Position numbers and translations under genes: made by a program. 64,000 bases of DNA, taken from the IMG/VR virus record IMGVR_UViG_3300032782_000001, positions 1-64,000 of that record. The stretch is one strand, 5' to 3'. The notes beneath the pieces are model-generated. The model saw nothing but the letters and a program-made list of their open reading frames with translations. It made no database searches and had not been told where the DNA came from. Numbering within the stretch: position 1 is the first letter of the stretch; each line of letters starts with the position of its first letter. This document shows, piece after piece, positions 5,438 to 63,233 of this stretch.

Positions 5438-5638
5438 CTAACTCTTCATGACTTCAAGGATGATTTTCTCTTCGCAAGGGACCCACTCCGGAACGGGTCC
5501 AGTACCTTGGACTGGCACGTGGAGATTCCAAGGAGGCTTCCTGGAAGACCAGTGGACTCCTCCGCATTTGGAACACCTCCATTTTAGAGCTCCTTCGGGT
5601 TCTTCCTGGACCCAGACGTGCCCCGAATGTCTTCCCAT
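5438..5638 (-). CDS. VMES-tag protein, HxW/CxxC type
   Basis: ends EEKIILEVMKS. Confidence 0.8.
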   Translation of the reverse strand: MGRHSGHVWVQEEPEGALKWRCSKCGGVHWSSRKPPWNLHVPVQGTGPVPEWVPCEEKIILEVMKS

Positions 5639-5814
5639 AAGCTAAAACGTAAATTCGAACCGGTCAGACGTATCCGGAATCAACAAACATAAATGTACCG
5701 GAAGACGGGATCATTTCAACGAACGTCCGGTATTTCGGGGGGTTTGGAAGTTCCGGGTGATTGGGAGTTGGAGGTCCGGAAGTTCGGGGATTTGGAAGTT
5801 TCGGGAGGTTGGGG

Positions 5815-6105
5815 ATGTTCCGTCGGCTCGTCGGGGTATGGGGCTGGTTCAGGCGTCGATTTCGGTCTTTGCCTCCAGCTCCTCCCAGTCTTCTGGCATG
5901 TGATCACCAGGTTTTGAAAATCCCGTTGTTTTCTCGGGATGGTCGGTGGCAGTCTTGCGGGTGTCCGGCGGCTCATTGGTTCTTGAGGGAGTATGATGGG
6001 TGTTTGGTACCTGTCTGTTCCCGGCATTTCAGTCTTTGGATCCTGCATGGCTGGCATTCCGTCTCTTGGGACGAAGCCCTTGTAGCCCAAGTCATGTTCT
6101 CTTGA
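5815..6105 (+). CDS. VMES-tag protein, Zn-module type
   Basis: ends DEALVAQVMFS; SD GGGAGG. Confidence 0.7.
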   Translation: MFRRLVGVWGWFRRRFRSLPPAPPSLLACDHQVLKIPLFSRDGRWQSCGCPAAHWFLREYDGCLVPVCSRHFSLWILHGWHSVSWDEALVAQVMFS

Positions 6106-6432
6106 GTCTGGCCCTGGAACGGGTCCTTCTTGCGTTCCGTTGCCCCTTCCTTCGTCTCGAACCAGTCTGACGGTCCTCTTGGGCCCTAGAACCTCCCCGA
6201 CGCCACGGAAAAACCGCTCCCTTTCGCGGGCGCCCGCGCAGGTGTGCCATATATTGGCCGAACTCCTGTCATACATTTTCCTACATAATGAACAGGGATT
6301 CTGTTTTATGGTCTGTCGGGTCTATGTTAAGGCGTGTGGCCCTAGGGGTGTTGTTTTGAAATTTCCTTGTTGGACCGCCAAACTGGATTCCAACTTGTTA
6401 AAGGTGATCTTCCCCCTAGTCACCTTTCATTC

Positions 6433-6693
6433 TCAGCTCGACATGATGTTCCATACGACGAATTCGTTGAAGGAGATTTCACGGATGTCGGGTGGAAGAA
6501 TGGTTCCGTCGTCCATTCTTTTGTAGGTTTTGGAGACTCGTTGCCATTCTTCGGCGCAGGTTGGGCAGCAGCTGAAGGTGTTTTTGGTGGTCAGGCCTTG
6601 GAAGTAGACGGAGGTTGGGTTGGGGCAGGGTCCTTTGAAGGACAGGCAGGATTCTGGGTCCCAGGCGAAGTCTTTGGGGTTTCGGACGGTCAT
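6433..6693 (-). CDS. VMES-tag protein
   Basis: ends EFVVWNIMSS. Confidence 0.8.
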   Translation of the reverse strand: MTVRNPKDFAWDPESCLSFKGPCPNPTSVYFQGLTTKNTFSCCPTCAEEWQRVSKTYKRMDDGTILPPDIREISFNEFVVWNIMSS

Positions 6694-6947
6694 GCGTCCA
6701 TCACTTGGGCGACGAGGAATTCTGCTTCTGAGAGTTCTTCCACTTTAACCCATTGGCCAAGGAATTTCAGATATCGCGGTTTATCGGCGTGGGGGCTGAG
6801 GAATTGGAGTTTTCCGTGGGTGGGGCATCGGGCGAAGGTTCGGATGGTTCGTCCGAACAATGTACCTCGGAAGAATTTTGTGGCGGGTTCGCCGCATTCT
6901 TTTTCCGGGTCTAGCGGGTTTTCTGCGTAGTCGCAGGAGTTCTTCAC
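6690..6947 (-). CDS. VMES-tag protein, Zn-module type
   Basis: CGEPA...RCPTH; ends EFLVAQVMDA. Confidence 0.8.
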   Translation of the reverse strand: MKNSCDYAENPLDPEKECGEPATKFFRGTLFGRTIRTFARCPTHGKLQFLSPHADKPRYLKFLGQWVKVEELSEAEFLVAQVMDA

Positions 6948-7159
6948 GAGTCCATCACCTGTCGGCAGATGAATTCTTCTCGGGAGATTTCAATCGGCTC
7001 CATCGGAGCCCCGCGGATTTCCATCGGAAGCAGTCCGTTTAGGCAACATTGGTTACAAGTTCCCCATACGAACATTTTTCCTTCTTGGCGTTCGTACTGG
7101 AAGAATCGAGAGGCTTCGTTCTGGCAGTCGTCTATGCAGGGGATGGGTTCCGTTTTCAC
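6944..7159 (-). CDS. VMES-tag protein
   Basis: ends EEFICRQVMDS. Confidence 0.8.
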   Translation of the reverse strand: MKTEPIPCIDDCQNEASRFFQYERQEGKMFVWGTCNQCCLNGLLPMEIRGAPMEPIEISREEFICRQVMDS

Positions 7160-7956
7160 GAGTCCATCACTTGGGCGACCAGGTACTCTTCCAGGGAGAT
7201 TTCCTGGATGTCATGTCCTGAATCTCGGGCGTGGTATCCGCATCGGGCCACGTTCAGGCGGGCGATCCTTCCTGAGAATTCGAATTCATCTCGGAAGAAT
7301 CGGACGGCCGGGTTTTGGCATTGTCCGGGGTCCAGTTTTTCCCAGTCGCATGGAATTCGGGGGTTTTCCGCGTCCCAGAGTTTTTGAAGCCTCTCCATTT
7401 CTTTCTGGAGGAGTGCTTGTCCGTCGAGTCCGTAGATCTGGTTGTCGAATTCGATGATTTTTTTCCGGTGTTCGGAGGGTCGGCTTGGGAGGCCCAGCGG
7501 GTTGACCATGAGCCAGTGCAGTTCTTTCGGAATCCGGTTTCCGGGGGAGGTGTCCAGGATGACCGGTTGTGGTCCTTCTCCGTCTTTCGGGTCTCCGTAT
7601 TCTTGACCGTCGTAGACGACCACGGGGAATGCGCCTTGGAGGTTGGGGAAGTGTGGGGAGTATTGGAAGATGTCAATTCGTCCGCATTGGAGCGCCATCC
7701 ATCGGCAGATGGTCCAGATGTATTCCCTTTCCAGGGAGCTACAGTTGTAGTCGAAGCCGATCCTGCACGGTCCGTCGTCGTAGGATAGGCTTTCGTTCGT
7801 CGGCAGTCCGTCTTCCAGTGGACCTCGGTAGTAGACTGGTTGGTCTGCCGGTTTTCCCAGGAGTTCGGGGAATTTCCGCAGGTTCTTTTCCAGGAAGGCG
7901 AGCATTCGCTTTTTGGCGATTTCGCTAGCCATTGGCGCAGTAATGCTGTAGCCCAC
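7156..7956 (-). CDS. VMES-tag protein; unknown domain fused to a Zn module
   Basis: ends CQNPA...RCGYH...EEYLVAQVMDS. Confidence 0.85.
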   Translation of the reverse strand: MGYSITAPMASEIAKKRMLAFLEKNLRKFPELLGKPADQPVYYRGPLEDGLPTNESLSYDDGPCRIGFDYNCSSLEREYIWTICRWMALQCGRIDIFQYSPHFPNLQGAFPVVVYDGQEYGDPKDGEGPQPVILDTSPGNRIPKELHWLMVNPLGLPSRPSEHRKKIIEFDNQIYGLDGQALLQKEMERLQKLWDAENPRIPCDWEKLDPGQCQNPAVRFFRDEFEFSGRIARLNVARCGYHARDSGHDIQEISLEEYLVAQVMDS

Positions 7957-7959
7957 CGT

Positions 7960-8163
7960 TTAGCTCTCCATGACTTGTCGGACGACGAATTCTTCCAGGG
8001 TAACAAGTTTAGATTCCCATCCCTGGATGGAGTGAACTCGACATCTTGAAATGAATAGACGGGATGCTTTGAAGTAGTAGAAGTAAATGGATCTTTTACC
8101 GCACCTCGGTTCCTCGACAAGCCGGTCGGCTCCAGCATCGCACGGAATGAATTCGTCTCTCAT
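7960..8163 (-). CDS. VMES-tag protein, Zn-module type
   Basis: ends EEFVVRQVMES; ATGA overlap. Confidence 0.8.
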   Translation of the reverse strand: MRDEFIPCDAGADRLVEEPRCGKRSIYFYYFKASRLFISRCRVHSIQGWESKLVTLEEFVVRQVMES

Positions 8164-8348
8164 GATTCCATGACTTGTCGGATGACGAATTCTTCTCGTG
8201 AAATTTCTTTCGTATATTTTTCTCGCCGGCAGGTCGGGCAGTGTGAAGCGCAGCGTCCTTTCAATTTCCGGAATTTGGAGATTTGGAAGAATCGGATAGC
8301 TGGCAGTCCGCAGACGTATCCCGGTTGTGTGTAGTCGCAGGTGATCAC
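8160..8348 (-). CDS. VMES-tag protein, Zn-module type
   Basis: ends EEFVIRQVMES; GTGA overlap. Confidence 0.8.
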   Translation of the reverse strand: MITCDYTQPGYVCGLPAIRFFQISKFRKLKGRCASHCPTCRREKYTKEISREEFVIRQVMES

Positions 8349-8650
8349 GGGTTTTCCGGCAGGAATTGCACGTCCACCAGGATGTCCGGGTCCACCCGAG
8401 CGTAGTACCCGTATTCGGCTTTGTCCAACCGATCGTCTCGAATCCCGATATCGCCAAAGCGGCTCACCGACGCGATCAGCACTTTGGAGCCGGCTTTCGC
8501 CATCCGCGTCGTCGTGTGTTCTTCCACCGGATGGGATCCATCCCAGATATGCATTTGGCAGTCCACCAGGAGGGTCGCGGTGGCGAAGTAGCCTTTGACT
8601 TCGAAAGTCGCCTTTCGCCGATACATCTCTTCCAAGATCTTCGCGTCCAT
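8345..8650 (-). CDS. hypothetical protein
   Basis: after cassette at 8652-8695. Confidence 0.8.
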   Translation of the reverse strand: MDAKILEEMYRRKATFEVKGYFATATLLVDCQMHIWDGSHPVEEHTTTRMAKAGSKVLIASVSRFGDIGIRDDRLDKAEYGYYARVDPDILVDVQFLPENP

Positions 8651-8698
8651 CGTCGCCTCCAGATCGCAATACGTCTCGACCTTTCGGATTTCCGTCGA

Positions 8699-8947
8699 TC
8701 AGGAATCCATGACTTCGTGGATTACAAATTCTTCCAGGGTCACCTCGGTCCATCCGCTAACGCCATGTTCATCACATCTGGCGTTGCAGCCCGATCGGAA
8801 GACGTAAAACCTCGTCGCGTCTCGTCCGCACGTCTTATTCACGAGCCACGGATAAGACGTGCGGACGAGACGCGACGAGGTTTTACGTCTTCCGCACGTC
8901 TTATCCGTGGCTCGTGAATAGTGGTCACAAGGGATGAGCCTTGTCAC
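8699..8947 (-). CDS. VMES-tag protein with in-frame inverted duplication
   Basis: ends EEFVIHEVMDS. Confidence 0.75.
   Translation of the reverse strand: MTRLIPCDHYSRATDKTCGRRKTSSRLVRTSYPWLVNKTCGRDATRFYVFRSGCNARCDEHGVSGWTEVTLEEFVIHEVMDS
8796..8894. repeat. 43-bp perfect inverted repeat
   Basis: arms 8796-8838 and 8852-8894. Confidence 0.9.
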
Positions 8948-9291
8948 TCCTGGTTGTACGGGTCCACTCGACATTCCAGCCTCGTCCACACGTCTTGGAA
9001 CCAGGTTTCCATCTTCTCGACCGAATCTCCCTCCCTCAACGATCGGGAGATGTCGAAAAAGTCGTCTTGGTTCCTTCGATAGAACCGGGCTTCGGCAGAG
9101 AAGGCGGTGTCTCCGCCGTAAGGCCGATGATCCCACCAATACACGTGAATGCAGTACAACTTCTTGACGTAGGTCGTGTCTTGGTCGAGGAAACTTCCTC
9201 GGATCCATTTGGACCACAAGCCGTCCGCCTTGTGAGGCTTGGATTCCCGGTACCCGGCTTTTTCGAGATCTGCTTCGGTGATCATCGTCAA
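8944..9291 (-). CDS. hypothetical protein
   Basis: ORF track; overlaps both neighbours by 4 nt. Confidence 0.75.
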   Translation of the reverse strand: MTMITEADLEKAGYRESKPHKADGLWSKWIRGSFLDQDTTYVKKLYCIHVYWWDHRPYGGDTAFSAEARFYRRNQDDFFDISRSLREGDSVEKMETWFQDVWTRLECRVDPYNQE

Positions 9292-9950
9292 ACCTCCACC
9301 ACTTGATATCCGATCTCGCGCGGTTGCCTTTCCTCGTCCAGATAAGCTGAATTGCAGAACTCCATCTCTTGGATGGTTTGGCGACCGAATCCGCCGTGCA
9401 CGTGTCCACTGAGCACGGCTTTCACTCGATGATCCGACTCGTAGAACAGGAAGTTGTACAGGTGAATGTTCCCCCTTTGCAGATCCAGGATCATGCTGGG
9501 CGGACAGTGGGCGAGCAACACGTCCGCCATTTTCAGCTCATCTTGGATCCAACGGAACTCTTGCCACATGTCTTGTGACCGACGTTCCCAGTTCCACTCC
9601 CCTTGAAGGTACGGGATGAAAGGGATCCCGTAGAACGTTCGGTCTTCCCACGTGATCAACTTCTTCGTCACGTTGACGGCGCGGATCCCGCCGGCTTTCA
9701 ACAGATCCTCGACGCGTTCCGGTTCCAGAAAGTCGTGATTTCCCGCCACGAACAGGAACGGCCGGTCTCCAAGCCATTCCTTCAATTTCTTCATCCTCCT
9801 CCGGAGCCAGTCCTCTTGGAACTTGGGCTCGACGGACCAGTCTCCACGCGTCTCGTTCGGCATGAAATCCCCCGAATGGACGACAGGCGCATCCAAATCC
9901 GGCAAATCCGGGAGCCTCCCATGCGTGTCAGAAACGTGGATGAGTTTCAT
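9288..9950 (-). CDS. calcineurin-like metallophosphoesterase
   Basis: motifs SDTH, HSGD, GNHD, GHVH. Confidence 0.9.
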   Translation of the reverse strand: MKLIHVSDTHGRLPDLPDLDAPVVHSGDFMPNETRGDWSVEPKFQEDWLRRRMKKLKEWLGDRPFLFVAGNHDFLEPERVEDLLKAGGIRAVNVTKKLITWEDRTFYGIPFIPYLQGEWNWERRSQDMWQEFRWIQDELKMADVLLAHCPPSMILDLQRGNIHLYNFLFYESDHRVKAVLSGHVHGGFGRQTIQEMEFCNSAYLDEERQPREIGYQVVEV

Positions 9951-9982
9951 CTCACCAACCAATACGGCTCGACCCGTCGAAT

Positions 9983-10225
9983 TTACGCCGACATCACTTC
10001 CCAGACGAGGAATTCTTCTTCAGTTATCCGGATCCATTTGTCTCCCAGGAACCCTGGTTTAAATCTGAGTGAATACTGATGTAGATTGCAAACAGCTGCG
10101 GCCCGATTCCCCGTAGGGCTCAATAGGAAGAAGTGTCTTGCAGGCCCGTTCGGCATCGACCCTTCTTCGCGTCTCTGCGCTTCGCACATCTCGCATTTTC
10201 GGACGCCACTTGTAAAATCTTCCAT
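9983..10225 (-). CDS. VMES-tag protein
   Basis: ends EEEFLVWEVMSA. Confidence 0.75.
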   Translation of the reverse strand: MEDFTSGVRKCEMCEAQRREEGSMPNGPARHFFLLSPTGNRAAAVCNLHQYSLRFKPGFLGDKWIRITEEEFLVWEVMSA

Positions 10226-10442
10226 GTCGTCTGACAATCGGAAAGTTTGTCAGTCTAAACAACCACCCTGCAATGATCCGGCGGTCTTTGTCTATCACTA
10301 CTGGGATCCGCCTCCAGACCATCCCGGCTTGTCTCACCTGCCAAAAGACGACGAGGCCGCATTATGCGCGCGGTTACTGCAATCCCTGCTACCAGCGCGC
10401 CAAGCGGCCTTCAAGAGCTAAGTCGGCTTTCCGTGAGGAATT

Positions 10443-11270: not shown

Positions 11271-11297
11271 TGTAGGCGTGAAGGGAGTCGAACCCTT
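11271..11297 (-). pseudogene. orphan tRNA 3' fragment (T-arm plus acceptor strand)
   Basis: AAGGG-TTCGACT-CCCTT-CACGCCT-ACA; no matching 5' half. Confidence 0.55.
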
Positions 11298-11514
11298 AAG
11301 ACATCATTACTTCATGGACGATGAACTCTGCTCGAGTGAGTTCCTGGACGAATCCCTTCTTGATTTCTTCCAAGAAAGTCGGATCCTCCGCGACGCATCG
11401 TTTGCAGCGGATAATGGGTCGCTTGCTGATGGTTCCTACAAAGAACCGGACGTCCTTGCTCATGCACATCGTGGTTTCCCACCCGAAGGGTACTTGGTTC
11501 TGGCAATAATCCAT
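11296..11514 (-). CDS. VMES-tag protein
   Basis: ends EFIVHEVMMS. Confidence 0.8.
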   Translation of the reverse strand: MDYCQNQVPFGWETTMCMSKDVRFFVGTISKRPIIRCKRCVAEDPTFLEEIKKGFVQELTRAEFIVHEVMMS

Positions 11515-11592
11515 ACTAGTCCCGGAAACCAGCCAATACGACGACCGGCGAATTTGCGCTATTGCCAAGTATGGCTGAGGACAGTTTACAGG

Positions 11593-11667
11593 TGGACCGG
11601 AAGGGATTCGAACCCTCAGTTAGGAAGTTTTTAAAACCTCTGTGTCTGCCTTTTCCACCACCGGTCC
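11593..11667 (-). tRNA. tRNA-Leu(UAA) with short variable loop
   Basis: acceptor GGACCGG/CCGGTCC, Leu-type D arm, anticodon loop TTTAAAA, T loop TTCGAAT, discriminator A. Confidence 0.85.
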
Positions 11668-11867
11668 GGATTGGTTCCTTCTTCGGTTCAGTTTTCTTTG
11701 AGCCAATTACGATGACTGGCTGCTCGGAGTTTTTCCAGTTTTCGCAGTTCTTTTAATTCTCGTAGCCATTTTGCTAGTTGCTTATGATCTCTTCCGCAAG
11801 GAGTGTCCTCGGAGGATTTTTCTTCCGCATGTTTAATAGCTTCTTCGAGTCTCATCCAGTGTATCCT

Positions 11868-12098
11868 TTACGCTTCCGGCAGCTTCACATGGATCCAGCC
11901 GAGAGACTTCGAGTTGTTGAGGCTCGGCTTCCTCTCACCTTCTCGAGCTGGCTGAGTATCCCCGGCCTTACGTTCCAGAACATCGAAGTTCGTGGCAGCC
12001 GTGTTCTTCTGACGAATCTCGTTGAAGGCCATCTGAGCGGCCTCTTCCGGCGAATTGGCCTCGAAGTCCATGTCCCAGCGCACGCGGTAATTCTTCAT
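11868..12098 (-). CDS. hypothetical protein
   Basis: MKNYRVRW...; ATGA overlap. Confidence 0.7.
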   Translation of the reverse strand: MKNYRVRWDMDFEANSPEEAAQMAFNEIRQKNTAATNFDVLERKAGDTQPAREGERKPSLNNSKSLGWIHVKLPEA

Positions 12099-12469
12099 CG
12101 CTTCTCCTTCGGAGCCTTCTTTGCTGGACGAACACTCGCCTTGTTGAACCTTCCTGAGACGAGGCTGATGACGCCAAGGAGCGTGGCCTCCCCACAAAGG
12201 ATGGAGCCTTCCGCAGCGTCGTAGAGGTAAATGCCCTCGAAAGGGTGACTCACCAACCCGAGGTAATCCTCTTCGTATTCCTGGACGACCTTCCGGTCCT
12301 TCCAGAACTGTTGGGCGCGTTTGGTGGCGAGTTGGATGTCGGAGTATGCTCCGAGGATGACATCCGTTGTCTCGTCATCTTGGACGATGACGTCCGGATC
12401 TCCTTCACCGTCTTGGTCCGTCACCACGTCGTAGTTGTTCCAAACGGTTCCCAGGATCACAACTGCCAT
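12095..12469 (-). CDS. hypothetical protein
   Basis: after cassette at 12472-12516. Confidence 0.8.
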   Translation of the reverse strand: MAVVILGTVWNNYDVVTDQDGEGDPDVIVQDDETTDVILGAYSDIQLATKRAQQFWKDRKVVQEYEEDYLGLVSHPFEGIYLYDAAEGSILCGEATLLGVISLVSGRFNKASVRPAKKAPKEKR

Positions 12470-12520
12470 CGTCGTCACCTCCAGATCAGGATACGACGTG
12501 ATCCGCCGAATTTGCGCTGG

Positions 12521-12709
12521 TCAGGCCGACATCACTTCGTACACGAGCCACGAGTTTCTCTCTTCGGGGGACATGGACTGAATAACTTCATCCAAGTTTG
12601 CCTGAAGCCTTTGCCGAAAGACTTCACGTTTCTCTTCGGACCTGGTGTCGTTCGTCAGCACATCTTGCAGTTGAGCGCTGATCCAGAACGCATCTTGAAC
12701 TTTGCTCAT
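12521..12709 (-). CDS. VMES-tag protein
   Basis: ends WLVYEVMSA. Confidence 0.8.
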   Translation of the reverse strand: MSKVQDAFWISAQLQDVLTNDTRSEEKREVFRQRLQANLDEVIQSMSPEERNSWLVYEVMSA

Positions 12710-13029
12710 GATGCATGGACCGCCAAGATGGTCATCTGACGCTTCACACGTTCTTTGATTTCCTCGAGGGGTCCGAAGAAGATGCGAAACCCGACGCCAT
12801 CCTTCGTGTACCAGATCTCACGACCATTGGCCTCTTGGGCGATGTTCATCCCGATCTGGATGTACTCGTGGGGCTCCAAATCCTGCCCCACATAATCGAA
12901 ATCCGTGAGTCCACCCTCGGTGAAATCCCCATTATCCAACGGGAAGATCTCGGCGTCGTTCTCTCGAGCGACAATGAACTCGGCGACAAGCGCCTGGAGT
13001 TCCTCATCCTCCTTGAATTTCAGCTCCAT
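12706..13029 (-). CDS. VMES-tag protein (variant)
   Basis: ends TILAVHAS. Confidence 0.75.
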   Translation of the reverse strand: MELKFKEDEELQALVAEFIVARENDAEIFPLDNGDFTEGGLTDFDYVGQDLEPHEYIQIGMNIAQEANGREIWYTKDGVGFRIFFGPLEEIKERVKRQMTILAVHAS

Positions 13030-13229: not shown

Positions 13230-13277
13230 TATCGTCACCTCCAGATCTGAGTACGTCGGCGACCGGCGAATTTACGA

Positions 13278-51120: not shown

Positions 51121-51130
51121 CGGAGGGCTA

Positions 51131-51415: not shown

Positions 51416-51496
51416 ATATATGGCATATATTAAAACGACCCTTCTGCCATATATTCACGGTATGCCACATATTTAAACGATCCCTGCCATGCGTCC

Positions 51497-52400: not shown

Positions 52401-52430
52401 AATTCGTGACTTTCTGACGTATGATCTTGA

Positions 52431-53205: not shown

Positions 53206-53208
53206 TTC

Positions 53209-55738: not shown

Positions 55739-55998
55739 AGTTACTTCACGGAGATACTGAATTCATAGAATGCCGTGGGTCACGGTGGGCACGGGTTGGC
55801 CCTCCGTGTGAAAGTTCCGGGACAATATTTGTAAAGTCGAGAGATTGGGTGGGACCCGGAACGGAAATGGCCAATGTTGAATGGCATGTTTACTGTAAAC
55901 CATGCTGGAATGCTCACAGAAAGAATATGAAGGGACTTGATGAGTTCCAGGTCATGAGTTTCGAAGAATGGATTGTGTCCATAGTGATGGAATCGTGA
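55735..55998 (+). CDS. VMES-tag protein, Zn-module type
   Basis: ends EEWIVSIVMES. Confidence 0.8.
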   Translation: MKLLHGDTEFIECRGSRWARVGPPCESSGTIFVKSRDWVGPGTEMANVEWHVYCKPCWNAHRKNMKGLDEFQVMSFEEWIVSIVMES

Positions 55999-56053
55999 AA
56001 GCTGAAAAGCTGAAACAGTTCCTTTCCGATGTGATTCCACTTATCTGAACTGT

Positions 56054-56356
56054 ATGATCGAACACCTTTGGCGGAGGTCTATTCCGCAAGACGGTGTTTG
56101 GAAATGTATTCGTTGCGGAATTGAAATCTTTTGGATCCCTGACGGGGATCAATTCACCCCATTAGACGATCCATTCTACGACAGACGTCCGTTTCCTCAC
56201 GAATCCGGTCCGGTCGTGTCTGTTTTGGATGGGGCGTATATGAACGTATCTGTTTTGGATGGGGCGTATATGAACGGGTACGACGCGTGGGAAGCTCCAT
56301 GCGGAGCTCCCAGAGATTGTGGGCTTCTGATCGTACAAAAGATTATGGAGTCTTGA
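56054..56356 (+). CDS. VMES-tag protein, HxW/CxxC type, with a 27-bp internal duplication
   Basis: VSVLDGAYMN twice; ends VQKIMES. Confidence 0.8.
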   Translation: MIEHLWRRSIPQDGVWKCIRCGIEIFWIPDGDQFTPLDDPFYDRRPFPHESGPVVSVLDGAYMNVSVLDGAYMNGYDAWEAPCGAPRDCGLLIVQKIMES

Positions 56357-56359
56357 CTT

Positions 56360-56668
56360 ATGATCTCACCGCGAAGTGCTGCGAAAATTCGTGATTTCGG
56401 ACAGGTCTACGGAGTCAGAGGCCCTCGTATGACCAAGCATCGGCTTCTGACTGATGAACTCCGTGTCCGATGTTCCATTCCCGGATGTTTGGAACCGGCT
56501 TGTTATTTTTGGGTTTGTGAGAAGGCTTCTCCGCTCCAAGGCTTGGATATTTGTACGTGGTGTCGAAATCACGTGTTGAAGGTATACCAACCTTCAACCA
56601 ATCATGTTTGGATGTCTGAATCCGTACTCATCGACATCCTGATCGTAATGGAGATCATGGAATCATGA
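56360..56668 (+). CDS. VMES-tag protein, Zn-module type
   Basis: ends IVMEIMES. Confidence 0.75.
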   Translation: MISPRSAAKIRDFGQVYGVRGPRMTKHRLLTDELRVRCSIPGCLEPACYFWVCEKASPLQGLDICTWCRNHVLKVYQPSTNHVWMSESVLIDILIVMEIMES

Positions 56669-56892
56669 AGCAGCGCGTAATCGCGAACGAAGAAAGGTGT
56701 GAATGGCTCGGCCCTTTCCGATTTCATGGCTATCAGGAGAAATGTGGTCGCAGGGCTGTTCGCTTCTATCTTTGCCATGACGGCACTGTCTCTGCTCGTT
56801 GCAAGGGCCACGTTCCTCCTGGCGTTCCCGAATCTATTTCCCAGGAGGATTGGTCTCGTTTGAAAATTGTGTCGGAAATCATGACCGCATGA
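56665..56892 (+). CDS. VMES-tag protein, Zn-module type
   Basis: ends IVSEIMTA. Confidence 0.8.
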   Translation: MKQRVIANEERCEWLGPFRFHGYQEKCGRRAVRFYLCHDGTVSARCKGHVPPGVPESISQEDWSRLKIVSEIMTA

Positions 56893-57356
56893 ACCGTTTG
56901 ATTTGTGATTTGCGGATTTGGACTGATGAGTATCAGTCCAAGAAGTGTGGTCGCGCTGCAGCCTTTTTCTTTGCCGGGTTTGACGTCCACGGCAGACTAA
57001 AAGTTCTCATCCGTTGCCGGTGGTGTGGCGATGTCCAAAAGCATTGGATCCTGGGATCACCTCCCAATCCCGGATTACGATTTCGACAAATTCCTGCATC
57101 ACAAGTTCCTGTTCTTTTGGCAATTTCCGAAATAATTAACACCACGATCGTCCAGGAAATTGCTCGGCCAATCATGCATCGATGGCGCCGGATTCGGAAA
57201 ACTGTCAAAAAACCTGCACATTATAAATGCGATCGATGTGACCGCGTGTGTGAAGGTAATGCCCGACCAACGGATTCTATCATGATGAGAGACCCTGTGA
57301 CAGGTGTCCGGCGAACCTGTGATGAAGAAATTATCGCGGCGGTTATGGAATCATGA
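56889..57356 (+). CDS. VMES-tag protein with two fused modules
   Basis: ends CDEEIIAAVMES. Confidence 0.8.
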   Translation: MNRLICDLRIWTDEYQSKKCGRAAAFFFAGFDVHGRLKVLIRCRWCGDVQKHWILGSPPNPGLRFRQIPASQVPVLLAISEIINTTIVQEIARPIMHRWRRIRKTVKKPAHYKCDRCDRVCEGNARPTDSIMMRDPVTGVRRTCDEEIIAAVMES

Positions 57357-57562
57357 GTAGGACTCGAGATTCAAGCCGGTGTGAACATCGATTTTCTCAG
57401 GAGTCTGCTGCATATAGACTAAAGAATGTCACAGTTCAATCTTGTGATCGATGCAAACTGAATATCTTCCGTTGTTCCCGGTGCAAGCAATTGGTTTTGA
57501 AGGCTCAAAAGTTCCAATGCATCAATAATCTTTGCATTGTAGCCGATATTATGGAATCATGA
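57353..57562 (+). CDS. VMES-tag Cys-rich protein
   Basis: ends IVADIMES. Confidence 0.8.
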   Translation: MSRTRDSSRCEHRFSQESAAYRLKNVTVQSCDRCKLNIFRCSRCKQLVLKAQKFQCINNLCIVADIMES

Positions 57563-57723
57563 GTAACAATGTAATGTCTATGGTGATCAATGGCATGCTC
57601 GGAATTTTCGCAGCAGTTGGATGGGCCCTAGCAATACTGGAACTTGGCGTCATTGTCTTATTTTTCAGTTGGTTCATGAGCGGGGCTTGGTATCGATGGA
57701 AGCATCGAATCCCAAAGTCATAG
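57559..57723 (+). CDS. small membrane protein
   Basis: hydrophobic; ATGA overlap. Confidence 0.65.
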   Translation: MSNNVMSMVINGMLGIFAAVGWALAILELGVIVLFFSWFMSGAWYRWKHRIPKS

Positions 57724-57935
57724 GAGAATGTCCATGGTCCCTTTGGGACGGTCAACATGATTTCCAAGCGGGGGTTCTCGTAAGTCTAGCCCCGGGAGCC
57801 GTCCGGATTTCTTGTTGCTTTTGCGGATTGGAATGGCACCAGTGTCCACACGGTTGGCTTTGGGATTTTGCCACTGATGGCTCTCTTTGTCCCATCTGCG
57901 GACTGAAGATAGTGGAAACGATCATGGAATCATGA
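57696..57935 (+). CDS. VMES-tag Cys-rich protein
   Basis: ends IVETIMES. Confidence 0.7.
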   Translation: MEASNPKVIGECPWSLWDGQHDFQAGVLVSLAPGAVRISCCFCGLEWHQCPHGWLWDFATDGSLCPICGLKIVETIMES

Positions 57936-58159
57936 ACAGTTTTCTTCGAGATCCCAATTCTCCACCTCACCATTGGAAGCGTGTTCCAGGTGATTGGGGT
58001 CGATGGAAATGTGAAAAATGTGAGTCTCTTTACCCGGGTTCACAGAATCCGCATCCTGATCCAAATGCGGACACTCCAGATCCTTACATGAAGTCCTGGT
58101 GTGGAGGTAAATTCTTGAGTTGCGACGAGATTGTAGTCTGGGCAGTCCAAGAAGAATGA
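57932..58159 (+). CDS. VMES-tag protein, HxW/CxxC type (variant)
   Basis: ends CDEIVVWAVQEE. Confidence 0.75.
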   Translation: MNSFLRDPNSPPHHWKRVPGDWGRWKCEKCESLYPGSQNPHPDPNADTPDPYMKSWCGGKFLSCDEIVVWAVQEE

Positions 58160-58365
58160 GAATTACCTGCGAATGGGTAGTAGCTGACTTGACATTTCGT
58201 TGTCCTGAGGACGCCGTAATTGGAATAGTCGGATCCTTTCCTGGTGGGACGATTAGGGAAGTTTACTGTCAGGCTCATTACGAATGTGTGGTCGGTATTC
58301 TCGACAGCTGTTTGGAGACTATGTCTGTAGGTGAGTTTTTGGTTCGAGAAATTCATGATTCTTGA
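58156..58365 (+). CDS. VMES-tag protein, Zn-module type
   Basis: ends EFLVREIHDS. Confidence 0.8.
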   Translation: MRITCEWVVADLTFRCPEDAVIGIVGSFPGGTIREVYCQAHYECVVGILDSCLETMSVGEFLVREIHDS

Positions 58366-58385
58366 TTTCGGCGTAAAATGGGTCT

Positions 58386-58610
58386 GTGATTCCGTCCCAT
58401 AAATGCAATAATTCAGTTCAATTCGGATGGGATGCCGCACTTTGCGGAAGTCTCGCAATTCGAGTCTTCAGGGACCTTCGTCCGCATTCCACTAACGTGA
58501 AATATCTATGCGAACGTTGTTTCAAAGAAGAGCGTGAGAGGCTTCAAAAAGCTGGAATGACCGAAATGTCTTTAGAAGAAGACGTCGTTTATGGGGTCAT
58601 GGAATCATGA
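58386..58610 (+). CDS. VMES-tag protein, Zn-module type
   Basis: ends EEDVVYGVMES. Confidence 0.8.
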   Translation: MIPSHKCNNSVQFGWDAALCGSLAIRVFRDLRPHSTNVKYLCERCFKEERERLQKAGMTEMSLEEDVVYGVMES

Positions 58611-58912
58611 CTGTCCCGGATGTTCGAAACCAGACGGAAGTAGAAGCAGGATCCAATTACCATAAGTCTTGGATATACGTCCTACACTCATCTCTTGATC
58701 GCGTTAGTGATAGTCCTTTCCGATCTATTTGTCCTGCTTGTGATCGAGGACTCTTACTAGTCAAGCGAGATCACACACTAGAATACTGTTTTCGGATCGA
58801 CAATTGTTCCTTGTGCGGTCAAATCGTTGTTTACGAAGATGACAATATTGGTGGAATCAGCCTCCACCCATCCCTCAATGAATGTTTGGTTGCGGAGGTA
58901 ATGGATTCATGA
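58607..58912 (+). CDS. VMES-tag zinc-ribbon protein
   Basis: CPAC...CSLC; ends LVAEVMDS. Confidence 0.8.
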   Translation: MTVPDVRNQTEVEAGSNYHKSWIYVLHSSLDRVSDSPFRSICPACDRGLLLVKRDHTLEYCFRIDNCSLCGQIVVYEDDNIGGISLHPSLNECLVAEVMDS

Positions 58913-59193
58913 ACGACGGTTTCATTTATGAGTTCATTGCAAAGGAACGAGAGATTATCAGGAAAACACAGTTAGAAGTCAGGATTGTAGGAACACTTTC
59001 TATTTGTGCAGGAATAGCTGGCGTTGTTGGACATGCCACCATTCGCATCTATGGAGTGGAATGGTGGAGAGGAATATTCACTGTTGTATGCATTGTGTTG
59101 TGTCCTCATTTCGCTAAATGGTGGTGGGATGAGCGGAACCACGTTAAGCAATTGGAGAAGAATTTGTTGGTGTTTGAGGTCATGGAATCATGA
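58909..59193 (+). CDS. VMES-tag membrane protein (2 TM)
   Basis: ends LVFEVMES. Confidence 0.8.
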   Translation: MNDGFIYEFIAKEREIIRKTQLEVRIVGTLSICAGIAGVVGHATIRIYGVEWWRGIFTVVCIVLCPHFAKWWWDERNHVKQLEKNLLVFEVMES

Positions 59194-59378
59194 TCGAACA
59201 CCAGTGGCTTTGGAAGAGAATGAGTAAGACGGGGAGTGATAATATCTGGGTTTGTGAAAGATGCGGAACAGAATTTCCCGTAGGTACTAGTGGGTATAGG
59301 CCTGAAGTCTATATACCAACGTCCCAAACTTCGGAAGACTGTGACGTAGAAATGATTCGTCAAGTGATGGAATCATGA
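59190..59378 (+). CDS. VMES-tag protein, HxW/CxxC type
   Basis: ends MIRQVMES. Confidence 0.8.
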   Translation: MIEHQWLWKRMSKTGSDNIWVCERCGTEFPVGTSGYRPEVYIPTSQTSEDCDVEMIRQVMES

Positions 59379-59602
59379 AACTCACGAAATCCGAAATCAA
59401 GGCTCTTCTCCAGCTTTGGGAAGCTGGAATCCATAATGCTGTCGCTCCCAGCTCCAATGAGCGTCGGTTCTTCCAATCCCTCCGGCAAAAAGGGTATGCC
59501 ATTACTTTCAGTGTAAACAGAAATTTCCGAATCACTGAGAATGGAATTCTTCGAATCGAAGATCCGGCCAAACTCTTCGTGAAGGAAGTAATGGAATCAT
59601 GA
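59375..59602 (+). CDS. VMES-tag protein, winged-helix-like
   Basis: L..KGY...ITENG pattern; ends FVKEVMES. Confidence 0.8.
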   Translation: MKLTKSEIKALLQLWEAGIHNAVAPSSNERRFFQSLRQKGYAITFSVNRNFRITENGILRIEDPAKLFVKEVMES

Positions 59603-61383: not shown

Positions 61384-61608
61384 ATGGCACCGTTGTCTCT
61401 CCGCATGAGTAAGTTCCTTTTGAATGTTGCTGCCATGCCTGGCGCAAAAGGGGAGTTCCGCGACGGATGGGGAAGTGCGAAAGGACTTGCTCGCCGAGGG
61501 CTCTCCACATTCCCGAAGATGTTCAATTCTCGGGAGTTTTCCGTTTCGCTCACCGAAGCGGGAGTGGAATTCGCCAAAACCCTGGATTTCCCAAATCCCA
61601 ATGGGTAA
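61384..61608 (+). CDS. small winged-helix-like protein
   Basis: L.RRGL...LTEAG pattern. Confidence 0.6.
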   Translation: MAPLSLRMSKFLLNVAAMPGAKGEFRDGWGSAKGLARRGLSTFPKMFNSREFSVSLTEAGVEFAKTLDFPNPNG

Positions 61609-61870
61609 GCCTGAAACTTTTGCCGGTGAGAAAGTTCTGAACCGAGCTGTCGCTAGGTTCAGGACCGGAGTCCGTAAACCATTCCAATTCAATGGGAAAA
61701 CTTTTGAATTGACAAATGGAGTGTCAGAAGACGGATTCCTATCTGTTCGAGTACAAACTCAATCTAATTCACCACCATTTTCGAAGTGGATGCAGTTGCG
61801 AACCTTGGATGCTTCTGGTCTGCTTGAAGCAATCAATATGTTCGTCATTTCCGAAGTCATGGAGTCCTGA
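61601..61870 (+). CDS. VMES-tag protein
   Basis: ends VISEVMES. Confidence 0.8.
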   Translation: MGKPETFAGEKVLNRAVARFRTGVRKPFQFNGKTFELTNGVSEDGFLSVRVQTQSNSPPFSKWMQLRTLDASGLLEAINMFVISEVMES

Positions 61871-61880
61871 ACGGGACTCT

Positions 61881-62168
61881 ATGTTCGCAAACTACGGTGC
61901 CTCAGGAGTATCGAAATCCATGACGCCTGACGAGATCCGGTCGAAGGTAGTTGTCTTGCTCTCCAAGAGCCATCCGGGGGAAGATGTAAAGGTGGACGTT
62001 GGAAACGTCCCTTACGGACTCTTCGTATGGGAAGAAGGCGATCATAAGCACGTGCCCTTGAAGACTGGCGATCTATTCAAGTCGCTTGGCTTCTCCCCTG
62101 ATGTCCGTGATTGGGCCCATTCCCTTCCTATTGTTGCACTTGAATTGTCAGCACTGAAGGCGTCATAA
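61881..62168 (+). CDS. hypothetical protein
   Basis: ORF track, start trimmed to MFANY. Confidence 0.65.
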   Translation: MFANYGASGVSKSMTPDEIRSKVVVLLSKSHPGEDVKVDVGNVPYGLFVWEEGDHKHVPLKTGDLFKSLGFSPDVRDWAHSLPIVALELSALKAS

Positions 62169-62169
62169 T

Positions 62170-62358
62170 TTGCCATACGACAACGCTGGCTCAGCAATTT
62201 TCCCCTTTACAGACGTTAAATGTTGGACATCCGTAGGTCCAATATTTTGCAAACGATGCGGCGGAAGTTACTGGATTGTAGATCAGCAAACCCAAGAAGA
62301 GGCCCACACGCAACAAAAATGTGATTTGGCGATTGTGGAAGCGGTGATGGAATCATGA
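62170..62358 (+). CDS. VMES-tag protein
   Basis: ends IVEAVMES. Confidence 0.75.
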   Translation: MPYDNAGSAIFPFTDVKCWTSVGPIFCKRCGGSYWIVDQQTQEEAHTQQKCDLAIVEAVMES

Positions 62359-62687
62359 CCGTTAATGAATTGAAGAAGGCGATCATTAAGGCTAGTTGGA
62401 AACAAATTATCGATTGGACCCTCCTTATCGACACTCTCCACGAACTCAAAGACACGACTAAAGGTCGTCGCTATGCTCGTACTGGATGGAAAGACCGTCA
62501 CATCCGTCGGGGAGCCGTTCTAGCAGCTCTTTTCAGGACTTATATTCCGTTCGACTTCCAAGTGGAAGAAGCTCGCAAGCTTCTGAAGTATTACGCTGGC
62601 CAAATCCGAGCGTATGAGGGGAAAGTCCCCATGAAGACTCGTGAAGCCATTTTCAATGAATCTGCCAAAAAGTGGCAAGCGGCATGA
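62355..62687 (+). CDS. hypothetical basic protein
   Basis: ATGA overlaps. Confidence 0.75.
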   Translation: MTVNELKKAIIKASWKQIIDWTLLIDTLHELKDTTKGRRYARTGWKDRHIRRGAVLAALFRTYIPFDFQVEEARKLLKYYAGQIRAYEGKVPMKTREAIFNESAKKWQAA

Positions 62688-63013
62688 AACAAGAAGAATC
62701 CAATTGTGACTCCGAAGAATCTGAATGCCCTGGAGATGGCAAGTGTCATGGGCCTATGCGTTGGTGCACGAGGTGCGGAGAAGTCGATCTGGTCTGCGAT
62801 TTCCCGGAATGCGATTCTCATCCGAGAATTGGAGTAATTCAAAAGATTGTAGAATCATCGAGACGTGAAGTCCAAAGACTGGAATCTGAACTTCGACTCG
62901 CTCGAAAAGAACTGGATGAAGCGGAGGAAAAGCTTTACCACTATCTTCGTGGTCCTTACCGGATGACTAAAGAATCTCGTCTGGATGTTATCCGAACCGT
63001 CATGGATTCATGA
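62684..63013 (+). CDS. VMES-tag Cys-rich/coiled-coil protein
   Basis: ends IRTVMDS. Confidence 0.8.
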   Translation: MKQEESNCDSEESECPGDGKCHGPMRWCTRCGEVDLVCDFPECDSHPRIGVIQKIVESSRREVQRLESELRLARKELDEAEEKLYHYLRGPYRMTKESRLDVIRTVMDS

Positions 63014-63014
63014 G

Positions 63015-63233
63015 ATGAAACAGTTCAAGTTAGGCATTGGGCTTCACGGGATAGTGAAAAAACATCGTTGGATTCGGACGTCTGAGTCTCAACGTCAACC
63101 TGGCGATGCTTATTATTTCAAATGGAAATGTCGGCGTTGCGATACTACAACGAGTTTCCGACGCAAGAAACCCAAGTCTCCTGAGTTCGGAGACTGTGCA
63201 GAAGCTATCATCCGTCAGGTGATGGACTCGTAG
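63015..63233 (+). CDS. VMES-tag protein, HxW/CxxC type
   Basis: ends CAEAIIRQVMDS. Confidence 0.8.
   Translation: MKQFKLGIGLHGIVKKHRWIRTSESQRQPGDAYYFKWKCRRCDTTTSFRRKKPKSPEFGDCAEAIIRQVMDS

What the first reader, a model, noticed from the sequence alone, without database searches (positions are those of the whole stretch)
5438..63233. About 85 unrelated phage proteins share one C-terminal peptide (VMES tag): candidate modular docking/adaptor system
Seen: more than half of the genes end in (S/T)xEE(F/Y/W/A)hhx(E/Q/S/D)-(V/I)-(M/H/Q)-(E/D/x)-(S/A)-stop, e.g. EEFVIRQVMES, EEWLILEVHES, EFCVADVMEA. Carriers are 60-314 aa, on both strands, with unrelated bodies (Zn modules, winged-helix-like, two-TM membrane proteins, large unknown domains). 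The last Ser is encoded by TCN and also by AGC/AGT (7960, 38445, 41723, 51120), and all three stop codons follow, so selection acts on the peptide and its terminal position. None of the recognisable enzymes carry it. Inference: an amphipathic helix with a free C-terminus binds one shared partner, turning a hypervariable library of binding domains into interchangeable adaptors or cargo. Conceptual parallels are the poxvirus ankyrin-PRANC/F-box proteins, EEVD-TPR clamps and C-terminal protease degrons. I know of no described phage family with this motif, but cannot search.
Basis: partly seen in the sequence, partly recalled or inferred. Interest (0 to 1): 0.95.

Follow-up and report, generated by a model that had tools for sequence, protein, structure and literature searches.

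The report
Shared C-terminal tag on phage proteins
About half of the genes in this arm of a 436-kb uncultured wetland phage, mostly unrelated small proteins, end in the same short helix (…V-x-x-V-M-E-S-stop), which looks like an undescribed address or docking tag whose partner is still unknown.

Summary
In the window, 76 six-frame ORFs end in [VI][MHQ][EDSTKNQA][SA]-stop against 0.64 expected; about 81-85 do so with variants. The whole 436,316-bp phage genome has 131. Conservation is at the peptide level: codon positions 1 and 2 are informative, position 3 is nearly free, and nothing is conserved after the stop. The end point is fixed: 107 of 108 homologues of one tagged family end in the same alignment column.

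The tag recurs in related uncultured huge phages, while the tagged proteins themselves turn over fast. No tagged protein has a Pfam match. About a quarter form one Zn-ribbon paralogue family; the rest show no detectable similarity to each other.

New finding: one conserved, single-copy, untagged protein carries the same motif internally, at its flexible N-terminus. It is a small LigA-type BRCT protein (33018-33374). Its key residue varies with the lineage's tag residue, and where its motif has decayed the tags are almost absent.

Best reading: a modular docking tag for one shared partner, with the BRCT protein as part of the system. Binding is not shown, because the complex prediction gave no answer. 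I found no description of this in the literature searched.

The parts
5438..10237 (-). Array of 9 tagged small genes (ends VMKS, IMSS, VMDA, VMDS x3, VMES x2, VMSA), mostly of the Zn-ribbon/[ST]xEE[FYW] class.
11296..13841 (-). 4 tagged genes (EVMMS variant, VMSA, VHAS, VMEA).
19225..20855 (-). 4-5 tagged genes (DTMES variant, VMES x3, VHES).
23132..25794 (+). 5 tagged genes. They include the clade-conserved 23132-23731, which has the variant end VMDC (orthologues end VQLC and VTLS).
25892..27001 (+). MoxR-type AAA_5 ATPase, untagged and conserved in the clade. It is a neighbour, not a demonstrated part of the tag system.
   Evidence: Pfam AAA_5 4.7e-07; 57-59% identity in G001, G003 and G017.
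27155..27379 (+). Tagged gene (VMDS).
29579..29833 (+). Tagged Zn-ribbon-family gene (IMDS).
29900..31387 (+). DUF2201 protein: an HExxH metallopeptidase domain plus a vWA domain with an intact DxSGS MIDAS motif. Untagged. It was a candidate receptor but is not supported.
   Evidence: Pfam DUF2201_N 2.5e-21 and DUF2201 9.2e-10. Invariant H108 E109 H112 H117 D368 S370 S372 in 68 homologues. It is present in contigs with few or no tags.
31445..32070 (+). 2 tagged genes (VMES x2).
33018..33374 (+). Small LigA-type BRCT protein that carries the tag motif internally at its N-terminus (residues 13-20, VVLDVMEV). It is conserved and seen once per relative examined (each genome searched also holds a larger, ligase-type BRCT), and is the best candidate component or hub of the system.
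   Evidence: Pfam BRCT 7.8e-10. PDB LigA BRCT 1l7b 6.9e-13. Motif conserved in 27 homologues. It is one of only 2 internal matches in all G000 genes, against 53 terminal. It co-varies with the tags. The N-terminal helix 8-17 has low pLDDT, 50-60.
34013..36599 (+). 6 tagged genes (VMVA variant, VMES x2, VMDS, VQES, VMTA). They include the clade-conserved 35295-36020.
37410..38945 (-). 4 tagged genes (VMES x3, VHES). 37973-38443 and 38445-38945 are paralogues.
40056..40745 (-). Tagged gene (VMSS).
40893..44581 (+). 6 tagged genes, up to 316 aa (VMES x2, VHES, IMKS, VMQS, VMDS).
46282..48557 (+). 6 tagged genes. They include 46894-47328 (P0001), the best-conserved tagged family: a beta-rich body plus a C-terminal tag helix.
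50734..53884 (+). 11 tagged genes (including the IVMLS and EVMRS variants). Many are Zn-ribbon family; one is a membrane protein.
54473..59602 (+). 16 consecutive or nearly consecutive tagged genes, many with ATGA stop/start overlaps.
61424..63233 (+). 4 tagged genes (VMES x2, VMDS x2).

Best explanation
The window is the early or accessory arm of a complete 436-kb uncultured huge phage from a wetland metagenome. About 81-85 of its roughly 150 genes, and 131 to about 190 genome-wide, encode small, fast-evolving proteins of mostly unknown fold. Each ends in the same short amphipathic helix: (S/C N-cap)-[ED]-[EL]-x-h-[VI]-x-[EQ]-[VI]-[MHQ]-[ED]-[SA]-COOH.

Shown:
- The conservation is on the peptide.
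- The protein ends exactly two residues after the M/H/Q.
- The tag is appended to different bodies.
- The tag persists across a phage clade while the bodies are replaced.
- The one conserved protein with the motif in an internal position, a small LigA-type BRCT protein with a flexible N-terminal helix, changes its key residue in step with the tags. It loses the motif where tags are absent.

Inferred:
- The tag is a modular docking or address peptide read by one shared partner. It ties a large, rapidly renewed set of binder or inhibitor domains to a common site. The one tagged protein with a recognisable fold resembles an immunity protein.
- The BRCT protein belongs to this system. Either it is the hub itself, with its N-terminal helix pairing with the tags or acting as a built-in pseudo-ligand of its BRCT groove, or it is a co-client of the same unknown receptor.
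- Because LigA/RFC1-type BRCT domains bind DNA nicks or 5'-phosphate ends (established knowledge, not tested here), the hub version would bring the tagged proteins to DNA ends or the replication site.
For: - Enrichment: 76 observed against 0.64 expected, p about 6e-127. Terminal VMES 58 against internal 3.
- Codon-periodic information, free third positions and no downstream conservation.
- 107 of 108 homologues of the tagged family P0001 end in the same alignment column. Endings among the 120 listed homologues are VMES 33, VHES 8, VMET 7 and others.
- The tag is present in relatives: G001 (61 ORFs), G003 (55), G017, G002, and loci L137, L147, L149. It is absent in more distant G004, G005, G011, G013, G014.
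- Only about 4 tagged proteins are shared by G000, G001 and G003.
- In the P0001 model the tag is helix 131-143. Cellular look-alikes, including an Imm72-domain protein, align only to residues 1-124/126.
- The BRCT internal motif is one of 2 internal matches against 53 terminal, with 1.5 expected in shuffles. It is conserved in 27 homologues.
- Co-variation of the BRCT residue with the tag -3 residue on the same contig: M with M/H/Q in 8 lineages; L with L (L206, 4 of 4); L with L11/M11/I2 (L208); L with V/V/V/M/L (L211); L with I (L142); I with V/I (L146); S with H/T/Q/N and no M (L210); a degenerate motif with almost no tags (L209).
- The BRCT N-terminal helix is predicted with low confidence, as expected for a free tethered helix.
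Against: - No binding is shown. The one complex prediction (DUF2201 + BRCT + tagged P0001 + Mg) returned 'no answer', score 0.00.
- The BRCT copy of the motif is internal, while all others obey a strict C-terminal rule. The two may therefore not be read in the same way.
- G002 keeps M in its BRCT protein although its tags favour H.
- The co-variation rests on about 15 contigs, several with few genes. The BRCT tree is too poorly resolved to count independent events, and a single origin is not excluded.
- No BRCT-domain column co-varies convincingly with the motif residue.
- A host-encoded partner cannot be examined, because the host is unknown.
Confidence: 0.5

Rival explanations
1. The tag is a degron or timer. 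A protease or unfoldase, of the host or of the phage, recognises the free C-terminal peptide and clears the whole class of early proteins together.
For: - The position of the C-terminus is strictly conserved.
- The last residue is small, and C-terminal degrons with a free carboxylate are a known principle (ssrA/ClpX; established knowledge).
- The carriers are small early-type proteins in operon-like arrays.
- The phage carries its own tmRNA.
Against: - The sequence (acidic -2, Ser -1) does not resemble the ssrA or ClpX C-motifs.
- No ClpP-, Lon- or S41-type protease was searched for or found here.
- A degron does not explain the conserved internal copy at the N-terminus of the BRCT protein, or its co-variation with the tags.
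Confidence: 0.18
2. The receptor is the neighbouring MoxR AAA+ / vWA-metallopeptidase (DUF2201) pair. The vWA MIDAS site binds the acidic C-terminus, and the HExxH domain trims or degrades the tagged proteins or their bound targets.
For: - The pair lies in the middle of the tagged arrays and is conserved in all tag-rich genomes.
- The HExxH and DxSGS MIDAS residues are invariant in 68 homologues.
- PF13203 is absent from 5 tag-less relatives.
- MIDAS sites bind acidic ligand residues (established knowledge).
Against: - The pair is also present where tags are weak or absent: G008, G019 and L209.
- The same kind of pair is described in group 2.2 jumbo phages and was proposed to act in virion assembly (PMC7824862).
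- The complex prediction gave no support, although that is not evidence against.
Confidence: 0.1
3. There is no shared partner. The tag is only the conserved last helix of one very large, fast-diverging paralogue superfamily and serves as an internal structural element.
For: About 30 tagged proteins do form one Zn-ribbon family, and BLAST misses such relations.
Against: - The carriers include beta-rich, helical, Cys-free and membrane proteins.
- Cellular look-alikes of P0001 lack the helix.
- A purely internal structural helix would not keep the same M-E-S end on different folds. It would also not drift in concert within each genome together with the BRCT motif.
Confidence: 0.1
4. The signal is at the nucleic-acid or translation level. 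It could be a junction sequence for translational coupling or re-initiation, a nascent-peptide effect on termination, or microhomology for cassette recombination.
For: - TGA is over-used in tagged genes (73-84% against about 50%).
- ATGA stop/start overlaps are more frequent (38% against 12-17%).
- TCA-TGA creates an ATG for the next gene.
Against: - Third codon positions are nearly free. Ser is encoded by both TCN and AGY, M is replaced by H (CAC/CAT) or Q, and all three stop codons occur.
- Nothing is conserved after the stop.
- 46 of 89 tagged ORFs have no same-strand start within 30 nt.
- Positions -7, -8, -10 and -11 are conserved as amino acids.
- The motif is conserved internally in the BRCT protein.
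Confidence: 0.03

Closest known systems
Poxvirus ankyrin-PRANC (F-box-like) and similar viral adaptor families
   Same: Many proteins with variable binding domains share one C-terminal module that docks to a single partner. Both are large, fast-evolving viral gene sets.
   Different: PRANC is a domain of about 40-50 aa that binds host Skp1. Here the element is an 8-16-aa helix ending the protein, with no sequence relation (0 Pfam hits in 74 proteins), in a bacteriophage, and the partner is unknown.
C-terminal signals read by one machine (Dot/Icm T4SS effector C-termini, T9SS CTD, LPXTG, PEP-CTERM)
   Same: Dozens to hundreds of unrelated proteins of one genome carry the same C-terminal signal.
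   Different: There is no transmembrane or basic tail after the motif and no 70-100-aa CTD. No sortase, exosortase or secretion machine was seen. The carriers are small proteins of a virus, and the motif is the very last residues.
Short acidic C-terminal docking tails (SSB C-terminal tail, Hsp70/Hsp90 EEVD-TPR, gamma-H2AX tail-BRCT)
   Same: Each is a short peptide whose free C-terminus is positioned exactly. A BRCT domain that reads a C-terminal tail has precedent (MDC1 and gamma-H2AX; from knowledge).
   Different: In those cases one protein carries the tail and many partners read it. Here more than 100 proteins carry it. The sequence is also different, and no phosphorylation is known.
ssrA/ClpX-type C-terminal degrons
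   Same: Both are terminal peptides with a small last residue, and the exact end matters.
   Different: The -2 and -1 residues are Glu-Ser rather than non-polar Ala-Ala. No protease link was found.
Hyperplastic early-gene regions of T4-type phages (PeSL cassettes)
   Same: Both are long arrays of small, fast-turnover early genes of unknown function.
   Different: In T4-type phages the shared element is a DNA or RNA promoter and stem-loop cassette (from knowledge). Here it is a translated peptide under amino-acid selection.
MoxR-vWA-metallopeptidase pair of group 2.2 jumbo phages (Iyer et al. 2021, PMC7824862)
   Same: Genes 25892-27001 and 29900-31387 have the same architecture: a MoxR AAA+ ATPase, and a vWA protein with an N-terminal metallopeptidase.
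   Different: That pair was proposed to act in virion assembly. It is not known to be linked to any tag, and here it also occurs in contigs with few or no tags.

Membership tests
C-terminal sorting signals (LPXTG / PEP-CTERM / T9SS CTD) | The motif is followed by a hydrophobic transmembrane stretch and basic tail, or is a 70-100-aa CTD domain. A cognate sortase, exosortase or PorU is present. | tested here: not met
   The motif is the last 4-8 residues, directly followed by the stop. No Pfam domain is present in 74 carriers. The cognate enzymes were not searched for.
ssrA / ClpX C-motif degron | A non-polar C-terminal tripeptide such as L-A-A-COOH. | tested here: not met
   The consensus is [VI]-[MHQ]-[ED]-[SA]. 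Position -2 is E or D in 104 of 131.
TPR-clamp EEVD tails / PDZ ligands | EEVD-COOH for TPR clamps, or a hydrophobic last residue for PDZ ligands. | tested here: not met
   The last residue is S in 116 and A in 15 of 131.
PRANC / F-box-like C-terminal domain | A recognisable C-terminal domain of about 40-50 aa (Pfam PRANC or F-box). | tested here: not met
   0 Pfam families at E <= 0.01 in 74 tagged proteins.
BRCT domain (protein 33018-33374) | A match to the BRCT profile above its curated cut-off, and similarity to solved BRCT domains. | tested here: met
   PF00533 E 7.8e-10, 39.3 bits against a cut-off of 21.3. LigA BRCT 1l7b 6.9e-13 and RFC1 BRCT 2.4e-09. The AF2 model shows the beta-alpha-beta-beta-alpha-beta-alpha order.
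BRCT domain (protein 33018-33374) | Binding of a phosphate or of a C-terminal tail in the T/S-G...K pocket. | not testable with these tools
   G33 is invariant, and T32, S83 and K85 are nearly invariant. Equating them with the phosphate pocket is my inference from memory.
MoxR AAA+ / vWA-metallopeptidase (DUF2201) pair | An AAA_5 ATPase next to a protein with DUF2201_N (HExxH) and a vWA-like domain with a MIDAS motif. | tested here: met
   Literature: PMC7824862. Membership of the pair is met, but its link to the tag is not supported.
Immunity protein 72 (body of tagged protein 46894-47328) | A sequence or fold match to Imm72. | tested here: inconclusive
   Foldseek against AFDB clusters gives E 1.7e-6 and TM 0.56 over residues 1-124. 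There is no Pfam hit.

The most novel reading that the evidence does not exclude
A clade of huge phages runs a proteome-wide addressing system. More than 100 rapidly renewed early proteins per genome act as interchangeable adaptors, inhibitors or cargo. Each docks through the same C-terminal helix onto one phage-encoded hub, the small BRCT protein, whose own N-terminal copy of the helix pairs with the tags or gates the site. This would concentrate a library of host-takeover or anti-defence binders at one place, such as DNA ends or the replication site. It would be a bacteriophage counterpart of the modular adaptor families of eukaryotic viruses.
Probability: 0.25. Interest if true: 0.95.

Novelty: categorically new. 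Interest (0 to 1): 0.88.

Why it matters
Huge phages encode hundreds of small proteins with no known function. Here a fifth or more of one phage's genes, and about half of this 64-kb arm, carry one common, strongly selected handle.

A shared handle gives a direct experimental route into this unknown gene set. One peptide could be used as bait to find the partner, and one mutation class could switch the whole set off.

If the tag is a docking signal, it would be a new organising principle for phage early proteins. It could also serve as a compact, portable tag for synthetic biology.

The concerted drift of the tag and of the BRCT motif between lineages offers a natural co-evolution data set for finding the receptor.

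Tried and rejected
- DNA-junction or coupling explanation. Rejected on codon-periodic information, synonymous and AGY codons, all three stops, no downstream conservation, and 46 of 89 tagged ORFs without a nearby downstream start.
- Stop-codon recoding. Two tRNA(UCA) genes exist at 139122-139296, but long late genes are intact under code 11 and use TGA in 52% of cases. Global TGA reassignment is unlikely, and these tRNAs remain unexplained.
- DUF2201/MoxR as receptor. Co-occurrence looked good at first: present in four tag-positive genomes, with PF13203 absent from 5 tag-less relatives. It failed when G008, G019 and L209 turned out to have the pair with few or no tags.
- Phylogenetic profiling for a receptor. 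103-119 clade-specific genes remain, which is not discriminating.
- Complex prediction of DUF2201 + BRCT + P0001 + Mg: 'no answer'.
- ESM Atlas look-alikes of two larger tagged proteins: nothing usable.
- Column-wise co-variation inside the BRCT domain: no clear site.
- BRCT tree, to count independent changes: unresolved.
- Searches of GenBank phages. The BRCT protein has no match, and the region 25500-33000 has no DNA match. The nearest terminases are an uncultured 485-kb phage at 40% identity and Tunturiibacter phage Tunturi_5 at 28%. No cultured member is known.
- Literature searches for VMES, C-terminal motifs in huge or jumbo phages, DUF2201 and BRCT: nothing describes the tag.
- IMG/VR scans with single proteins or small alignments found few loci.

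Full report
**What the window is.** The window is bases 1-64000 of a single 436,316-bp contig. It is an IMG/VR virus record with direct terminal repeats, estimated 100% complete, from a wetland metagenome. GC content is 50%. The genome has 48 tRNA genes, a tmRNA and two tRNA(UCA) genes. Late and structural genes are long and intact under the standard bacterial code. No GenBank phage matches at the DNA level. The nearest terminases in GenBank are an uncultured 485-kb phage at 40% identity and Tunturiibacter phage Tunturi_5 at 28%. No cultured relative is known.

**Check of the observation.** The window has 636 six-frame ORFs of at least 40 aa.
- 76 end in [VI][MHQ][EDSTKNQA][SA]-stop. The internal frequency of the same pattern predicts 0.64 (Poisson p about 6e-127).
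- 84 end in [VI]xx[VI][MHQ]xx-stop, and the union of the two patterns is 89.
- After removing obvious chance or antisense ORFs and adding variants (EVMRS, EVMMS, QVMVA, IVMLS, FVMDC), about 81-85 genes carry the tag.
- My rough gene caller finds 143 genes within 5438-63233 (158 in the whole window), so about half are tagged.
- Genome-wide, 131 ORFs match the strict pattern. Terminal VMES occurs 58 times and internal VMES 3 times.
- A definition that does not fix the -3 residue gives 194 ORFs against 52 expected.
- Tagged genes are densest in the first 80 kb but occur all along the genome.

**Peptide or DNA?** The codons settle this.
- Val is GTC 33, GTG 21, GTT 6, GTA 5; Ile is ATC 8, ATT 3.
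- Glu is GAA 30, GAG 15; Asp occurs 15 times.
Ala occurs 10 times.
- Met is replaced by His (CAC/CAT) or Gln (CAG).
- All three stop codons occur.

Nucleotide information is high at codon positions 1 and 2 and near zero at position 3. This also holds at -7 (1.0/1.6/0.06 bit) and at -8, -10 and -11, which were not used to select the set. Downstream of the stop it is at most 0.07 bit.

TGA and ATGA stop/start overlaps are over-represented in tagged genes. That explains the preference for TCA-TGA. However, 46 of 89 tagged ORFs have no same-strand start within 30 nt. A DNA junction or translational-coupling signal is therefore rejected.

**Anatomy of the tag.** The consensus in G000 (n = 131) is:
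- -13: S or A
- -12: C in 29
- -11: E, D or N
- -10: E in 49, L in 30
- -8: I, L or V in 87
- -7: V or I in 121
- -5: E, Q or D
- -4: V or I
- -3: M in 119, H in 8, Q in 4
- -2: E in 83, D in 21
- -1: S in 116, A in 15

Hydrophobic residues at -8, -7, -4 and -3, with an S/T or C cap, fit an amphipathic helix.

In the only family with a deep alignment (window 46894-47328, P0001), AlphaFold2 gives a mean pLDDT of 86. The model has a beta-rich body and a C-terminal helix 131-143, which is the tag. Cellular structural look-alikes align only to residues 1-124/126 and lack this helix. They include a 117-aa protein (E 7.5e-9) and an 'Immunity protein 72' domain protein (E 1.7e-6, TM 0.56). So the tag is an added module.

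**The carriers.** None of 74 tagged proteins has a Pfam match, and only 3 hit PHROGs, all of unknown function. BLASTP of the bodies finds almost no relations: 128 clusters for 131 proteins. An HMM of 19 small Cys-rich members, with tags removed, gathers 27 tagged and 3 variant-tagged proteins. This is a Zn-ribbon-like paralogue family with the [ST]xEE[FYW]hVxEVMES form of the tag. Others include Cys-free helical proteins, membrane proteins and proteins up to 316 aa. 'Unrelated bodies' is therefore largely, but not wholly, correct.

**Conservation elsewhere.** Relatives were found through the terminase, and several were fetched whole.
- The tag is abundant in G001 (393 kb, terminase 62% identical): 61 strict ORFs.
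- It is abundant in G003 (377 kb, 51%): 55 ORFs.
- G017 (363 kb) and G002 (308 kb) also carry it.
- So do the loci L147 and L149, and an ENA contig (L137) with independent gene calls.
- It is absent in more distant relatives: G004, G005, G011, G013, G014.

Only about four tagged proteins of G000 have homologues in both G001 and G003. The bodies are replaced quickly while the tag stays.

In the conserved P0001 family, 107 of 108 aligned metagenomic homologues end in the same alignment column. Endings among the 120 listed homologues are VMES 33, VHES 8, VMET 7, VHDL 6, VMEG 5 and others. The position of the C-terminus is under selection.

**Concerted drift.** The preferred -3 residue differs by lineage.

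| Genome | Residues at -3 |
|---|---|
| G000 | M 139, H 10, Q 6 |
| G001 | M 61, H 17, Q 14 |
| G003 | M 48, Q 23, H 13 |
| G017 | M 30, Q 24, H 18 |
| G002 | H 11, Q 6, M 6 |

Other contigs use L, V or I. All tags of a genome follow the local rule, which is what a single shared reader would produce.

**The BRCT protein.** Few untagged genes of this region are conserved in all tag-bearing relatives:
- the MoxR AAA_5 ATPase (25892-27001)
- the DUF2201 HExxH + vWA protein (29900-31387)
- a DUF6011 protein (38989-40059, minus strand)
- a 102-aa protein (41789-42097)
- a 118-aa BRCT protein (33018-33374)

The BRCT protein matches Pfam BRCT at 7.8e-10. Its closest solved relatives are the LigA and RFC1 BRCT domains.

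This BRCT protein carries the tag motif internally, at its N-terminus: MARxNExT…V-x-x-V-M-E-V-S, followed by the BRCT domain. In all G000 genes the extended motif occurs 53 times at a C-terminus and only twice internally. This is one of the two, and shuffles give 1.5 in total. The motif is conserved in 27 homologues. It lies in a helix (residues 8-17) of low confidence (pLDDT 50-60), which suggests a free, tethered helix.

Its key residue follows the tags of the same contig.

| BRCT residue | Tag -3 residue on the same contig |
|---|---|
| M | M/H/Q in eight lineages |
| L (L206) | four of four neighbouring tags have L: VLAE, VLAE, VLNS, TLDA |
| L (L208) | L 11, M 11, I 2 |
| L (L211) | V, V, V, M, L |
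| L (L142) | VIES |
| I (L146) | VVES, VINS, VVDS, VVEG |
| S (L210) | H/T/Q/N, no M |
| D, degenerate motif VMMVDEK (L209) | almost no tags, although DUF2201, DUF6011 and the ligase are present |

The non-M variants do not cluster on a BRCT tree. That tree is poorly resolved, so a single origin is not excluded.

**Candidates that did not hold.** The MoxR/vWA-metallopeptidase pair looked attractive. It sits among the tagged genes, has invariant HExxH and MIDAS residues, and is absent from five tag-less relatives. But it is also present in G008, G019 and L209, which have few or no tags. The same architecture is already described in group 2.2 jumbo phages, with a proposed role in virion assembly (PMC7824862). 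The only complex prediction allowed (DUF2201 + BRCT + tagged P0001 + Mg) returned 'no answer'. It counts neither way.

**Interpretation.**

Shown:
- A strongly selected, modular, strictly terminal peptide sits on more than 100 mostly unrelated small proteins per genome.
- It is conserved over a clade of uncultured huge phages.
- It drifts in concert within genomes.
- It is mirrored by an internal copy in one conserved BRCT protein.

Inferred:
- It is a docking or address tag read by one partner.
- The BRCT protein belongs to the system, either as the hub (helix-helix pairing, or a pseudo-ligand of its own groove) or as a co-client of an unknown receptor.

The main rival is a degron or timer. 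A purely structural paralogue helix and a translation-level signal are unlikely.

**Novelty.** Full-text searches found no description of this motif or of any proteome-wide C-terminal tag in phages. The tag fails the defining features of the known C-terminal signals I considered: sortase or exosortase signals, the T9SS CTD, ssrA, EEVD, PDZ ligands and PRANC. It works like a short linear docking motif but belongs to none of those families.

Noticed in passing
G000:C1:139122-139296 (outside the window): Two adjacent tRNA genes with anticodon UCA, which ARAGORN labels SeC; they are 77 and 74 nt long. They would read the stop codon TGA. Long late genes are intact under code 11 and use TGA in about 52% of cases. 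Global recoding therefore looks unlikely, and their role is unexplained.
   Followed up: partly
G000:C1:97491-115165, 141433-141807; window 11593-11667 (-): The phage carries 48 tRNA genes, mostly in one block at 97-115 kb, and its own tmRNA with tag peptide ANDNGALRIAA. The window holds one tRNA-Leu(UAA).
   Followed up: partly
window 25892-27001 and 29900-31387: A MoxR AAA_5 ATPase and a DUF2201 protein (HExxH metallopeptidase, a Cys4 insert, and a vWA domain with an intact MIDAS motif). This is the pair described for group 2.2 jumbo phages (PMC7824862). It is conserved at 45-59% identity in the relatives.
   Followed up: yes
window 46894-47328: The body of the best-conserved tagged protein resembles cellular proteins that include an 'Immunity protein 72' domain protein (Foldseek E 1.7e-6). 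This hints that tagged proteins may be inhibitor or immunity-like binders.
   Followed up: partly
window 45017-46285; G000:C1:387803-388600 (-): The phage has an ATP-dependent DNA ligase. Far away it also has a 265-aa protein that looks like the C-terminal half of an NAD-dependent ligase (Zn finger, HhH, BRCT). The small BRCT protein of the tag region is a third, stand-alone BRCT.
   Followed up: partly
window 27466-29365: Two untagged genes lie between the MoxR and DUF2201 genes. One contains a DGQHR sequence motif, which is my reading of the sequence and has no Pfam hit. The other has a winged-helix HTH (Pfam). They are not at this position in the relative L137.
   Followed up: no
window 9288-9950 (-): A calcineurin-like phosphoesterase (Pfam Metallophos 1.4e-12) lies among the tagged genes and is untagged.
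   Followed up: no
window 38989-40059 (-): A 356-aa protein with a DUF6011 motif. It is untagged and conserved near the tagged arrays in most relatives examined (L137, L141-L143, L146, L147, L209, L210).
   Followed up: no
window 1-6000: The first 6 kb have higher GC (58-63%) than the rest (46-58%) and hold no convincing tagged genes. The terminal repeat of the genome should lie here.
   Followed up: no
window-wide, tagged genes: Tagged genes use TGA in 73-84% of cases, against about 50% in other genes. They overlap the next gene by ATGA in 38% of cases, against 12-17%. The last codon TCA plus TGA creates the next start codon.
   Followed up: yes
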